DNA from: Thecamonas trahens ATCC 50062
Lineage: Eukaryota > Protista > Apusomonadida
Assembly: GCF_000142905.1 (NCBI RefSeq)
Contig: NW_013657674.1
Location: forward strand, 280,709-344,708
DNA length: 64,000 nt
Direction: 5' to 3'
In this document: one piece after another, positions 9,622 to 12,377 of the stretch
Position numbering within the stretch: position 1 is the first letter of the stretch
How the letters are laid out: each line of letters starts with the position of its first letter
Translations under genes and position numbers: made by a program
The notes under the pieces: generated by a model
Database searches by the model: none
The model's input: the letters and a program-made list of their open reading frames with translations, nothing else
What the model was told of the DNA's origin: nothing

Positions 9622-12377
9622 ATGGCTGCGTCTAGTACCATTGCTGCAGTGGTGGCAGCTGCTGCTACTGCTGCTGCTGCTGCTGTGGCTACTACCCAGA
9701 CGTTGACTGCTGCGCACGTCCCGACTCGGAGGCCTGGCACGTCCGAGTCTGGCGACTCATGGGACATTTTCATCTGCCACGGCTCATGTGACAAGCGCAT
9801 GGCGCGGAGTTTGTATCATCGACTGACGGCGATGGGCCTTCGGGTGTTTTTAGATGTGTACTCGCTTGACGGACGATACTGCGGGAATGAGGAGGCTCTG
9901 GCACGGATGGCGCGGTGCTCGACGGTGGTCATCGTTCTCGTCTCCAAGTATATGCTGGTGACGACCTGGGCTGTGGCCGAGGCTGAAGCTGCTCTTGATC
10001 CTGCCTCACAGTGTGTGGTCCTGCCGGTGCTAGCCGATGCAGAGATGAGCCATATTGCGCTGCGAAGATGGATGGGGACTCCGGCTCCGGCAGGCGAACC
10101 ACACTTTCTCATTCAGTACATGGATTCTGCGTTCTCAGCCCTCACCGAGAACGGCTCCGAGAACATGGACAAGTGGGCAAAGGCCGACAAGGATGCACGG
10201 GTGGATCTAGTGCGACGGCTGCGGCAAATAGGTCTCGCTGCGTACAACACCCAAGACTACGTGCTCGACGATATACTCGACGATATTGCCGAGCGAGCGC
10301 GCACGCTGCACGCCGACGAGATGGCTGTGCGCGCGCGCCGGCTTGCACTGCAATCGCGCGATTGTGCGCCAGAGGACGTTGCTATGCGGCGGGCCGAGCT
10401 GGAACTCCGCGGCGTTGACCGCTATGTTGAGCCGCCAGACCTTGCCATCGCACTGGACAGGCTTGCGCCGGGAGGGCGGACCTTGGTCGTGTGCGGGCTT
10501 CCTGGCTCGGGTAAGTCTGAGCTGGCGCGAGCCATTGGACGTGCATCGCATAGTAACGTAGCATGGATCCCGCCATACCCCGGCCAGTGCAACCTTGCGC
10601 TTTGCGATGCACTTGTCAACTACTTTGGCGTGGCGAGGAACATTTTCGACGACAACCTCTCGCTGGAGGCGCTTGGTGGCCGGCTGGCAGACAAGCTGGG
10701 CCGGACGACGGTTGCTATGTTGCTTATTTTTGATGGCGTTGACGATCCGACGCTGATCAACTGCCTGGCAGGTGTGGTGAGCGATACCTCGCACTCGGTG
10801 GTGGTCACGACAACGAGCGACTCGATGCCGGGCTCTGGTACGATCATGCTCCCGCTCGACGTGCTGCCGCATGTTACGGCAAGTGCGGTCTTCCGTGCGT
10901 ACCTGCCGGAGCATCTGCAGAACTCTCCGTGCGTTGCTGCCGCGGCGGCGGTTGTCGTTGCAGACACTCATGGACACGTGATGACGGTCCGGATGCAGGC
11001 GCAGACGATCCGCTCAGAGAGCGATCTGAAGGTGCTGGCGGCCGAGGCAACGCAGTCGGTGACTATCCTGTCGCCTAGCCGGCGGCGAGAGCTTGTTTGC
11101 AGCAAGCTTTTTGCGCACATCAACATTATTTTGTGCGCCATCCGGACCTACTGCCGCTCTACTGCACGCTCGGCGTGTTTGCCAGTGGCCGACCGATCTT
11201 GTTTGCGCACCTGAAGATCCTGCACTCGATTGTTGATACGCAGCTTGCGCTGGTTGAAAAGCTCAGAGCACTGGCGCAGCTGGGTCTAGTTGCTCTCGAT
11301 GACATCGAGGTACCGGCGATAGTCACGCTACACTCGCTGCAGAGCGCATGGCTCGCGGAGCGGCTGACGATGCATCCAAGGTGGTCGAGATACATGCGGG
11401 TTCTCGTGTTTTGCCTTGCCGCTCCGCGATTCCTCACCTCTGTGGACCTGATCGATGGAGCGGTGGTGGCGCTGAACCATGACTGCAGCGCCTTGGCTGA
11501 TCTAGAGGTTGAGCCCTCAGCTGCAGCCAGTGTGGTCCGGTTTGCGCACGCTATGCTTGCCGACGTCGCGGCACCGCACATGGTAGATGACGCACTGCTG
11601 AGCGCGCTCACTGAGCTAGCGGCGGAGGCAGCGTGTGGTGGAGCTGACATTGGCGCGATTGCAGGCGAACTTGTCCTCCCACACGCCAGCGCAGTGACAG
11701 ATGCCGGTCTCAAGTGCGACGCGCTGCGAGAGCCTGCGTTTTCCAACCTCGTCTCGGTTTGCCTCGCCGGATGCGTTCAGATCACCAACGAGGGCGTCCG
11801 AGTGTTGATCCAGCGAGCTGCAAAGCAGCTGAACTCGCTTGACCTGGCTGGCTGTGTCGAGATTTCAGACGATCTTGCCTTAGTGCTGGCGGGTGTGTTC
11901 AAGCAGCTGGAGACGTTGTCGGTGGCGCGTTGCCCGCGAATCACAGACAAGCTCTTCAACACTCTGTCCCATGTCCAGATCTGGGTTTCGCTGACATCGC
12001 TAGATGTCTCTGGCTGTGGCGTCGGCGTCGGTGCGCTGGAGTTTGTGCTCAGGGACCAACATGCGCCGCTTGTTGAGCTGTACGTCAGCGAGTGCCCAGG
12101 CATTGATACGCAAGCGGTCGATGTGGTAGCGCGGTACGGGCATTTGCTCTCACGTCTCGACGTCTCGTACTGCGGCGGAATTACGCTTGCCGATCTTCTC
12201 CCTGTCCTTGCCAACTTCTCTGCTGCCAGCGAGAGTGGCGATGAGCACGGAAAACCATGTCGAGTGTGGGTCCTGGGTCTGGCCGAGGGCATGGATGGTA
12301 GCGAAGCCGAGGCGGTATATCGGAAGTATGGCGCCATCCTCGAGTTTACCAGCCGCTGCAAGTACCACCACAGGTAA
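9622..12377 (+). CDS. TIR-NB-ARC-LRR (NLR-like) protein, ~920 aa after correcting a 1-nt frameshift near 11130; start uncertain (in-frame ATG also at 9250)
   Basis: TIR: WDIFICHGSCDK, LRVFLD, VLVSKY, TTWAVAE, VLPV. NB-ARC: GLPGSGKS, LLIFDGVDD, VVVTTT, GHVMTV, LYCTLGVF, TLHSLQ. LRRs such as LNSLDLAGCVEISD, LETLSVARCPRITD and LSRLDVSYCGGIT. Confidence 0.82.

What the first reader, a model, noticed from the sequence alone, without database searches (positions are those of the whole stretch)
9622..12377. Plant-TNL-like TIR-NB-ARC-LRR architecture built with F-box-type cysteine LRRs
Seen: a TIR with W-x3-E (TTWAVAE) at the usual catalytic Glu position. An ordered NB-ARC motif set follows: P-loop GLPGSGKS (~10495), Walker B LLIFDGVDD, RNBS-B-like VVVTTT, GLPL-like GHVMTV, winged-helix LYCTLGVF, MHD-like LHSL (~11330). 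The LRRs have the LxxLxLxxCxxI(T/S)D pattern typical of FBXL/AMN1 proteins. Known: TIR-NB-ARC-LRR is characteristic of the plant lineage, whereas non-plant NB-ARCs usually carry TPR or WD40 repeats. Inference: the TNL architecture was assembled independently here. The sensor-1 Arg (TTR) and the GLPL Pro are substituted, which may indicate a non-signalling sensor role.
Basis: partly seen in the sequence, partly recalled or inferred. Interest (0 to 1): 0.82.

Follow-up and report, generated by a model that had tools for sequence, protein, structure and literature searches.

The report
Protist TIR–NB-ARC–LRR receptor-like gene
The flagellate Thecamonas trahens has one gene that joins a TIR domain, a very divergent NB-ARC switch and F-box-type leucine-rich repeats, a layout like plant TNL immune receptors that seems to have arisen separately from the protist's own TIR–NB-ARC–WD40 family; a one-base frame break in the assembly is hidden in the public annotation by a false intron.

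Summary
Window 9622-12377 (+) is one gene, public model AMSG_01571 of Thecamonas trahens. It encodes three parts.

- TIR domain: Pfam TIR_2 E 2e-11, with the catalytic Glu present.
- Central ATPase: no Pfam NB-ARC or NACHT match. It is nonetheless NB-ARC-like. Profile comparison with 14 Pfam-verified Thecamonas NB-ARCs gives P 5e-15. The best fold matches are RPP1, APAF-1, NRC4 and CED-4.
- About eight cysteine-type LRRs: best fold match FBXL2, with no F-box.

The reading frame changes at a T4 run (11129-11132). The public 900-aa model bridges the change with a 53-nt GT..AG intron (11133-11185). That intron removes 18 codons that align with the winged-helix motif of the paralogs. It is therefore probably an artefact of a one-base indel, either an assembly error or a real mutation.

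The TIR (46% identity), the linker and the winged-helix/MHD part are closest to the protist's own TIR–NB-ARC–WD40 family. The LRR is not the plant NLR type. This supports independent assembly of a TNL-like layout.

Three switch residues differ from the paralogs: Walker B second Asp, sensor-1 Arg and MHD Asp. The GLPL Pro is missing from the whole family, so its absence here says nothing. A "non-signalling sensor" role is unsupported.

No relatives with this architecture were found. Function is untested.

The parts
9622..12377 (+). Whole gene (public model AMSG_01571). Read through the frame break it gives about 918 codons: 503 in frame 1, one broken codon, 414 in frame 3, then the stop at 12375-12377.
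   Evidence: P0001 is 100% identical on both sides of the break.
9622..9753 (+). N-terminal Ala/Val-rich segment of about 30 residues, modelled as a low-confidence helix, followed by a short linker. Absent from the paralogs. Role unknown.
9754..10332 (+). TIR domain with a helical extension. The Pfam core is 9766-10047. The catalytic-position Glu120 is at 9979-9981, in T-T-W-A-V-A-E.
   Evidence: Pfam TIR_2 E 2.3e-11. TcpB alignment. VIA Z 16.6 to RPV1 TIR and 16.2 to RUN1, rmsd 2.9-3.0 over 161 residues. 46% identity to paralog TIRs.
10363..11130 (+). Nucleotide-binding domain plus ARC1 helical domain, and the first winged-helix helix (K-L-F-A-H-I-N-I-I). Motifs: P-loop 10495-10518, Walker B 10720-10746, VVVTTTS 10798-10818, GHVMTV 10972-10989.
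   Evidence: hhalign P 5.3e-12 against 14 Thecamonas NB-ARCs. VIA Z 15.7 to APAF-1, 211 residues. Foldseek RPP1 2.9e-14. ESM Atlas top hits are all NB-ARC.
11129..11132 (+). T4 run where frame 1 gives way to frame 3. It looks like a one-base deficit. A frame-3 stop at 11076-11078 and the paralog alignment bracket the break.
11133..11185 (+). The 53 nt annotated as a GT..AG intron in the public model. In frame 3 they encode V-R-H-P-D-L-L-P-L-Y-C-T-L-G-V-F-A-S, the RNBS-D-like winged-helix element. Most likely coding, not an intron.
   Evidence: 6-7 of 18 residues are identical to the paralogs. The profile alignment runs 288 columns with this stretch and 178 without it.
11186..11666 (+). Rest of the winged-helix domain, with the MHD-like L-H-S-L at 11328-11339. 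A helical or degenerate-repeat linker follows and is poorly modelled.
   Evidence: pLDDT is under 50.
11667..12332 (+). Cysteine-containing (FBXL-type) leucine-rich repeats, about eight strand/helix units. No F-box.
   Evidence: Pfam LRR_6 E 4.9e-6. Pattern matches. Model pLDDT 70-93. Foldseek FBXL2 2.4e-9, then FBXL17, ribonuclease inhibitor, Skp2. Nearest sequence is the Vanilla F-box/LRR protein P0010.

Best explanation
This is one gene of the apusomonad Thecamonas trahens. It encodes an NLR-like STAND protein of about 918 residues. The order of parts is a short Ala-rich N-terminus, a TIR domain with its catalytic Glu, a highly divergent NB-ARC module (nucleotide-binding domain, ARC1, winged helix with an MHD-like His), and about eight FBXL-type cysteine LRRs.

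The assembly has a one-base deficit in a T run at 11129-11132. The public annotation hides it with a false 53-nt intron that deletes 18 winged-helix codons.

The gene is a divergent offshoot of the protist's own TIR-NB-ARC-WD40 family in which LRRs take the place of the WD40 sensor. The plant-TNL-like layout is therefore convergent.

Inferred mechanism, not shown: the LRR holds the switch closed until it binds a ligand. Nucleotide-dependent oligomerisation then brings the TIR domains together. The TIR domains cleave NAD+, either depleting it or producing a signal.

Three switch residues are changed: Walker B second acid to Gly, sensor-1 Arg to Thr, MHD Asp to Ser. This predicts nucleotide binding with weak or no hydrolysis.
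For: Identity and gene model:
- P0001 names the organism and the public model.

TIR:
- Pfam TIR_2 E 2.3e-11.
- The Glu aligns with the TcpB W-P-A-R-E.
- Z 16.6 to plant TIR structures.

NB-ARC:
- hhalign against 14 Pfam-verified Thecamonas NB-ARCs gives P 5.3e-12 for the frame-1 piece. It gives 5e-15 over 288 columns for the read-through with X at the break.
- Against the NACHT reference P is only 1e-4.
- Foldseek top hits are RPP1 (2.9e-14), Sr35, NRC2/3/4, CED-4, ZAR1 and APAF-1, with no NACHT NLR in the top 50.
- VIA Z 15.7 to APAF-1.
- ESM Atlas feature and structure neighbours are all NB-ARC.
- The weak HMMER hits P0005, P0006 and P0008 carry Pfam NB-ARC plus TPR.

Frame break:
- Frame-1 K-L-F-A-H-I-N-I-I matches paralog K-Y-A-H-I-F-D-I-I.
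- The frame-3 stretch inside the 'intron' matches the paralog A-I-Y-A-M-L-A-V-F-P-S element.
- L-H-S-L matches L-H-D-L.

Paralogy:
- TIR 46% identity, E 5e-27. Linker 29%. Winged helix 10-18 bits.
- The paralogs are TIR-NB-ARC-WD40.

LRR:
-.
Against: - No reads or transcripts were available. The break may be a real mutation (pseudogene), or the intron may be real.
- Pfam NB-ARC does not hit the locus even at E 10.
- The P-loop core scores higher to bacterial-type NB-ARC-TPR proteins (35-47 bits) than to the Thecamonas paralogs (2-13 bits). A simple 'divergent paralog' history may therefore be too simple.
- The winged-helix part was not modelled with confidence.
- Cdc6/ORC folds score only about 2 Z units below APAF-1.
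- No plant TNL sequences were included in a tree.
- NADase activity, ligand and oligomerisation are all untested.
Confidence: 0.7

Rival explanations
1. The frameshift is real. The locus is a recently broken pseudogene, or it makes only a truncated TIR-NBD-ARC1 protein that ends at 11214. The LRR part is not translated.
For: The only available sequence carries the break. The gene is single-copy with no close relatives, which fits a fast-evolving, dispensable gene. Three switch motifs are altered.
Against: Both halves are otherwise intact open frames of 503 and 414 codons with recognisable domains. The break sits in a homopolymer run, a typical sequencing error site. Other follow-ups of this genome reported single-base assembly errors (s1-744703, s1-746484; leads only). 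The altered Walker B and sensor-1 motifs recur in P0002.
Confidence: 0.2
2. The public model is right. A 53-nt GT..AG intron (11133-11185) is spliced out, giving a 900-residue protein with a shortened winged helix.
For: Canonical GT and AG ends, and the splice restores the frame. Thecamonas genes do carry annotated introns (PMC3680246).
Against: The 53 nt are open in the downstream frame. They encode 18 residues that align with a conserved winged-helix element of six intron-less paralogs. The profile alignment stops at ARC1 for the spliced model (178 columns, P 2.3e-11). It runs through the MHD for the read-through (288 columns, P 5e-15). The donor G-T-G-C-G-C coincides with a Val-Arg codon pair that is also V-R in the paralogs.
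Confidence: 0.07
3. The layout shares ancestry with plant TNLs, either by gene transfer from or to the green lineage or by inheritance from a common TNL ancestor.
For: The best solved-structure match of TIR plus NBD is the plant TNL RPP1. ESM Atlas whole-protein feature neighbours include plant TNL clusters at 0.86-0.89, which is lead level only.
Against: By sequence the TIR is nearest to Thecamonas paralogs (46%) and bacterial TcpB, with no plant TIR by phmmer. A HMMER scan of 1.84 billion proteins with the NBD found no plant NLR. The LRR is FBXL/RI-type and no C-JID or plant LRR family is hit. The paralogs carry WD40.
Confidence: 0.03

Closest known systems
Plant TIR-NB-ARC-LRR receptors (TNLs: RPP1, ROQ1, RPS4, L6)
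   Same: Same order of domains. The TIR has the catalytic Glu. The NB-ARC-type switch has a P-loop, a winged helix and an MHD His. RPP1 is the best Foldseek match for TIR plus NBD, and ROQ1 NB-ARC scores Z 14.3.
   Different: The LRRs are FBXL/ribonuclease-inhibitor type with helical backs, not the plant NLR type. There are only about eight repeats and no C-JID/post-LRR domain. Pfam NB-ARC is not matched. Walker B, sensor-1 and the MHD Asp are changed. The nearest kin by sequence are Thecamonas WD40-bearing paralogs, not plant genes.
Thecamonas trahens TIR-NB-ARC-WD40 family (for example L048, L049, L050; at least ten loci)
   Same: TIR 30-46% identical. The post-TIR linker is shared, as are the G-H-x-x-x-x motif in place of GLPL and the winged-helix and L-H-x-L motifs.
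   Different: The C-terminal sensor is LRR instead of a long WD40 array. The NBD core is hardly alignable by BLAST. The paralogs keep D-D, the sensor-1 Arg and the MHD Asp.
Bacterial-type NB-ARC-TPR STAND proteins (P0008 of Streptomyces narbonensis; metagenome P0002, P0005, P0006)
   Same: Best sequence matches of the P-loop core (35-47 bits, 37% identity over 126 residues to P0002). P0002 shares the Walker B D-[GN]-x-x-D-P and the T-[ST]-T motif without the sensor-1 Arg.
   Different: They carry TPR sensors and other N-terminal effectors (nucleotidyltransferase, HNH), with no TIR or LRR in these hits. E-values are marginal (1.9e-7 to 9e-4).
APAF-1 / CED-4 / Dark apoptosome ATPases
   Same: Fold of NBD plus helical domain: Z 15.7, rmsd 3.5 over 211 residues to APAF-1.
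   Different: Those have CARD effectors and WD40 or no sensor.
F-box/LRR proteins (FBXL2, FBXL17, Skp2) and AMN1-type LRRs
   Same: Cysteine-containing LRR consensus and fold.
   Different: No F-box. Here the LRR is fused to a STAND ATPase.

Membership tests
NB-ARC / AP-ATPase clade of STAND NTPases | Match to the curated family model (Pfam PF00931) above its threshold | tested here: not met
   No hit at E up to 1 in hmmscan. The locus is absent from the six-frame genome scan at E up to 10.
NB-ARC / AP-ATPase clade of STAND NTPases | Homology to verified members over NBD, ARC1 and the winged helix (ARC2) | tested here: met
   hhalign against 14 Pfam-verified Thecamonas NB-ARCs: P 5.3e-12 for frame 1, and 5e-15 over 288 columns for the read-through with X. 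NACHT control P 1e-4.
NB-ARC / AP-ATPase clade of STAND NTPases | Fold of NBD plus helical domain like APAF-1 and plant NLRs | tested here: met
   Foldseek RPP1 2.9e-14, CNLs, CED-4, APAF-1. VIA Z 15.7 to APAF-1. Cdc6/ORC is about 2 Z units lower.
NB-ARC / AP-ATPase clade of STAND NTPases | P-loop G-x4-G-K-[ST] | tested here: met
   GLPGSGKS at 10495-10518, invariant columns.
NB-ARC / AP-ATPase clade of STAND NTPases | Walker B with two acidic residues (hhhhDD/DE) | tested here: not met
   L-L-I-F-D-G-V-D-D. The first Asp is kept and the second is Gly. The paralogs have L-L-I-L-D-D.
NB-ARC / AP-ATPase clade of STAND NTPases | Sensor-1 Arg (RNBS-B, T-T-R) | tested here: not met
   V-T-T-T-S aligns with paralog V-T-S-R-N, so Arg is replaced by Thr. 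P0002 has the same replacement.
NB-ARC / AP-ATPase clade of STAND NTPases | MHD motif in the winged helix | tested here: inconclusive
   L-H-S-L aligns with paralog L-H-D-L. The His is kept and the Asp is Ser. The domain was not modelled with confidence.
Plant TNL family | Plant-type LRR followed by a C-JID/post-LRR domain | tested here: not met
   The LRR is FBXL/RI type. Pfam found no C-JID; the only plant-LRR family listed, LRR_RPS2, scores far below its cut-off (E 0.013, 16.0 bits against 27.9).
Plant TNL family | Phylogenetic placement of TIR and NB-ARC within plant TNLs | not tested
   No plant sequences were available for a tree. Indirect evidence points away from plants.
Enzymatic (NADase) TIR domains | Catalytic Glu in the alpha-C region (W-x3-E) | tested here: met
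   Glu120 aligns with the Glu of TcpB W-P-A-R-E. It is invariant in the paralogs. The fold matches RUN1/RPV1 TIR at Z 16. That this Glu is catalytic in those proteins rests on established knowledge.
Enzymatic (NADase) TIR domains | NAD+ cleavage activity | not testable with these tools
   Needs an enzyme assay.
NACHT NTPases | Match to PF05729 or to verified NACHT domains | tested here: not met
   Pfam E 0.045, 14 bits against a cut-off of 26.7. The locus is absent from the genome scan. hhalign P 1e-4 over 97 columns. No NACHT NLR in the Foldseek top 50. The D-G-x-D-D Walker B resembles NACHT only in form.
F-box/LRR (FBXL) proteins | F-box followed by cysteine-type LRRs | tested here: not met
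   LRR type met. No F-box family hit.

The most novel reading that the evidence does not exclude
An apusomonad, a unicellular relative of animals and fungi, independently built a working TIR-NB-ARC-LRR immune-type receptor by swapping the WD40 sensor of its own TIR-NB-ARC family for FBXL-type LRRs. This would be a living example of the WD40-to-LRR step proposed for the origin of plant NLRs. Its switch variant (no second Walker B acid, no sensor-1 Arg, no MHD Asp) would be shared with some bacterial NB-ARC-TPR proteins and may work without ATP hydrolysis.
Probability: 0.45. Interest if true: 0.65.

Novelty: new variant of a known kind. Interest (0 to 1): 0.52.

Why it matters
TIR-NB-ARC-LRR receptors are treated as a hallmark of the green lineage. 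Non-plant NB-ARC proteins usually carry WD40 or TPR, as summarised in PMC8891106.

This gene shows the same three-part layout outside plants. It is built from parts with different histories: a TIR and winged helix from a protist-specific WD40 family, and LRRs of the FBXL type. That adds a case of convergent NLR design and a natural sensor swap.

Standard domain surveys would miss it, because Pfam NB-ARC does not detect the domain and the public gene model deletes part of the winged helix.

It also offers a test protein for asking whether TIR NADase signalling by STAND oligomerisation operates in free-living heterotrophic protists.

The practical gain is smaller: the gene model AMSG_01571 needs correcting.

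Tried and rejected
- phmmer of the NBD against PDB sequences gave only P-loop noise (ABC transporters, Lon).
- PADLOC and NCBIfam recognised only the TIR.
- Two word-index searches found only the protein itself, plus one Vanilla F-box/LRR protein.
- The 1.84-billion-protein HMMER scan gave eight hits, none with this architecture.
- The contig of the best hit, P0002, shows an NB-ARC fragment followed by a TPR ORF, not TIR or LRR.
- PF25372, precomputed for P0001, is unnamed in the local copy and rang nowhere. The Atlas names it LRR_FBXL15.
- I checked whether other Thecamonas NB-ARC genes carry LRRs. No LRR_6 hit lies within 6 kb of an NB-ARC hit. This scan also missed our own LRR, so it is weak evidence.
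- GC3 by frame did not locate the frame change.
- The winged-helix and linker part folded poorly, with pLDDT under 50, so there is no structural test of ARC2.
- The neighbour's N-terminus (F-D-V-W-L-T-Y-S-G-E) as a TIR: no Pfam hit and hhalign P 0.045. Not supported.
- Literature: no held paper links Thecamonas with TIR, NB-ARC or NLR. Urbach and Ausubel 2017 is not held. No figure for Thecamonas intron sizes was found.
- No sequence joined with real letters was sent to any tool. Database searches and folds used the two frames' pieces or the public model P0001. The read-through was made only in local scripts, with X at the break.
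Full report
**Where we are.** The window is contig C6:280709-344708 of a 28.7-Mb, 131-contig genome. It has about 62% G+C, with long unbroken ORFs on alternating strands. The protein search returned the public model [quoted passage not shown], 900 aa. It is 100% identical to the window on both sides of the frame change. Earlier notes of this scan name the same organism. 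One earlier first-reader note, s1-753675, covers this same stretch together with the neighbouring gene.

**Observation.** Residue numbers count from Met 9622.
- From Met 9622 frame 1 is open to 11214. A second ORF in frame 3 runs from just after a TAG at 11076-11078 to the stop at 12377.
- Pfam finds TIR_2 (E 2.3e-11, residues 49-142). On the centre it finds only generic P-loop families: AAA_22 at 1.3e-5, AAA_16 at 9e-5, NACHT at 0.045.
- There is no NB-ARC hit. LRR_6 scores 4.9e-6 on the second ORF.
- Trp116-x3-Glu120 aligns with the W-P-A-R-E of the Brucella TcpB TIR structures. Glu120 is invariant in six paralogs.

**What the central domain is.** Single-sequence methods fail.
- PDB phmmer gives P-loop noise.
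- PADLOC and NCBIfam see only the TIR.
- The genome-wide PF00931 scan at E up to 10 misses the locus, as does PF05729.
- A HMMER scan of 1.84 billion representatives gives only eight hits. The informative ones (P0005, P0006, P0008; E 4e-4 to 9e-4) are NB-ARC plus DUF7779 plus TPR proteins. P0008 is from Streptomyces narbonensis.

Profile and structure methods are clear.
- I built a MAFFT alignment of 14 NB-ARC regions cut from Pfam-positive loci of the same genome. The frame-1 piece aligns to it with hhalign P 5.3e-12 (97.5%).
- The P-loop, Walker B, RNBS-B and GLPL positions fall in register.
- A two-sequence NACHT reference from the same genome gives only P 1e-4.
- The ESM Atlas neighbours of residues 237-640 are all NB-ARC clusters (score 0.97). 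The structural neighbours are NB-ARC-TPR and plant RPP13-like proteins (TM 0.65-0.71).
- An AlphaFold2 model of residues 1-485 (15-row alignment A2, mean pLDDT 70.7) finds RPP1 first by Foldseek (2.9e-14). Sr35, NRC2/3/4, CED-4, ZAR1 and APAF-1 follow, and no NACHT NLR is in the top 50.
- VIA-align gives Z 15.7 to APAF-1 (rmsd 3.5, 211 residues) and Z 16.6 and 16.2 to the RPV1 and RUN1 TIR domains. Cdc6/ORC lies about two Z units lower.

The domain is therefore a STAND ATPase of the NB-ARC kind, too divergent for the curated model.

**The frame change.** The public model joins frame 1 to frame 3 with a 53-nt GT..AG intron, 11133-11185. Alignment with six intron-less TIR-NB-ARC paralogs shows three things.
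- The frame-1 peptide K-L-F-A-H-I-N-I-I, ending at 11130, matches paralog K-Y-A-H-I-F-D-I-I.
- The frame-3 translation of the "intron", V-R-H-P-D-L-L-P-L-Y-C-T-L-G-V-F-A-S, matches the paralog element ending A-V-F-P-S. Six to seven of 18 residues are identical.
- The downstream L-H-S-L matches L-H-D-L.

With X at the break, the read-through aligns to the NB-ARC profile over 288 columns, through the MHD (P 5e-15). The spliced public model stops after ARC1 (178 columns, P 2.3e-11).

The break is thus at the T4 run 11129-11132, where two bases are left over as an incomplete codon. The intron is most likely an artefact of gene prediction across a one-base deficit. I cannot tell an assembly error from a real mutation without reads. 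My split is about 0.6 error, 0.2-0.25 real frameshift and under 0.1 real intron.

No sequence joined with real letters was sent to any tool. Searches and folds used the pieces or P0001. The read-through exists only in local scripts, with X at the break.

**The LRR.**
- Five stretches fit L-x2-L-x-L-x2-C-x2-I.
- The model of 11133-12374 has eight strand/helix repeats with pLDDT 70-93.
- Its best PDB matches are FBXL2 (2.4e-9), FBXL17, ribonuclease inhibitor, KDM2B, Skp2 and the LRRs of animal NLRP3/NOD2.
- The Atlas gives FBXL13, FBXL7 and FBXL2.
- The only outside sequence hit is an F-box/LRR protein of Vanilla.
- There is no F-box, and there is no plant-NLR LRR or C-JID hit. Pfam listed LRR_RPS2 only far below its cut-off (E 0.013, 16.0 bits against 27.9).

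**Origin.**
- The genome has at least 27 TIR_2 and about 21 NB-ARC matches. At least ten pairs lie in one ORF.
- Three full ORFs are TIR-NB-ARC-WD40 proteins of 1456-1733 aa.
- Our TIR is 46% identical to three of these paralogs (E 5e-27 to 3e-23). The linker is 29% identical.
- The winged helix scores 10-18 bits to the paralogs and nothing to the bacterial hits.
- This places the gene as an offshoot of the protist's own WD40-bearing family, with a different sensor. It argues for independent assembly of the TNL-like layout.
- One point does not fit. The P-loop core scores 35-47 bits to P0002, P0005, P0006 and P0008 but only 2-13 bits to the paralogs. P0002 is a contig-edge fragment followed by a TPR ORF. 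It is 37% identical over 126 residues and shares the odd Walker B (D-[GN]-x-x-D-P) and the T-[ST]-T motif in place of T-T-R. Fast divergence, shared Ala/Gly-rich composition or replacement of the core are all possible (notebook, unexplained).

**Switch residues.**
- Against the paralogs, Walker B D-D becomes D-G, sensor-1 Arg becomes Thr and MHD Asp becomes Ser.
- The missing GLPL Pro is a family trait (G-H-A-L-A-L in the paralogs), not a peculiarity of this gene.
- From what is known of plant NLRs and APAF-1, these positions serve hydrolysis and the ADP-bound off state. I therefore infer nucleotide binding with poor hydrolysis. This is inference only.
- The TIR keeps its catalytic Glu, so nothing suggests a non-signalling role.

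**Mechanism proposed.** The domains, their order and their kinship are shown. The rest is inferred: LRR-mediated autoinhibition and ligand sensing, nucleotide-dependent oligomerisation, and TIR clustering with NAD+ cleavage.

**Novelty.** No held paper links Thecamonas with TIR or NLR proteins. PMC8891106 summarises NBS-LRR R-proteins as a green-lineage feature and proposes an NB-ARC/WD40 intermediate. The protein is already in public databases as uncharacterised, so the novelty lies in the reading: a convergent TNL-like architecture with FBXL-type LRRs, and a corrected gene model.

Noticed in passing
window 2367-8946 (-): A head-to-head neighbour, about 675 bp upstream. It is a very large ORF pair with more than 20 ankyrin repeats (Pfam Ank_2 E 1e-94) and a V-L-F-M-D-V-E-G stretch that looks like a GBP/atlastin G motif. 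The two listed ORFs overlap at 7291-7319, so there is another frame problem or an intron further upstream. Its N-terminus looks TIR-like by eye (F-D-V-W-L-T-Y-S-G-E). It gets no Pfam hit, and hhalign against the Thecamonas TIR profile gives only P 0.045.
   Followed up: partly
genome G000: L048, L049, L050 and about ten further loci (C97, C59, C64, C67, C70, C71, C17, C22, C57, C39, C38): A lineage-specific family of TIR-NB-ARC-WD40 genes of 1456-1733 aa. Several lie at contig ends and some are truncated or interrupted by N runs. No held paper describes them.
   Followed up: partly
L001-L004; L022, L023, L028, L036: Other TIR and NB-ARC combinations in the same genome: GNAT (FR47)-TIR, ankyrin-kinase-TIR and kinase-TIR, and protein-kinase-like sequence directly upstream of NB-ARC.
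   Followed up: partly
window 10330-11076: The P-loop core is more similar to bacterial-type NB-ARC-TPR proteins (P0002, P0008 of Streptomyces) than to the genome's own NB-ARC genes. The flanking TIR and winged helix are closest to the latter. This is a mosaic pattern or a composition effect.
   Followed up: partly
window 9622-9710: The N-terminal 30 residues are an Ala/Val/Thr-rich hydrophobic stretch absent from the paralogs. It could be a membrane anchor or signal, or mere GC-rich low complexity.
   Followed up: no
window 12515-15721 (+): Downstream 1068-codon ORF with long Ser/Arg-rich low-complexity runs and no Pfam family.
   Followed up: no
window 36-405 and 16468-16870: Two runs of N (370 and 403 bases): gaps or withheld stretches in the assembly.
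   Followed up: no
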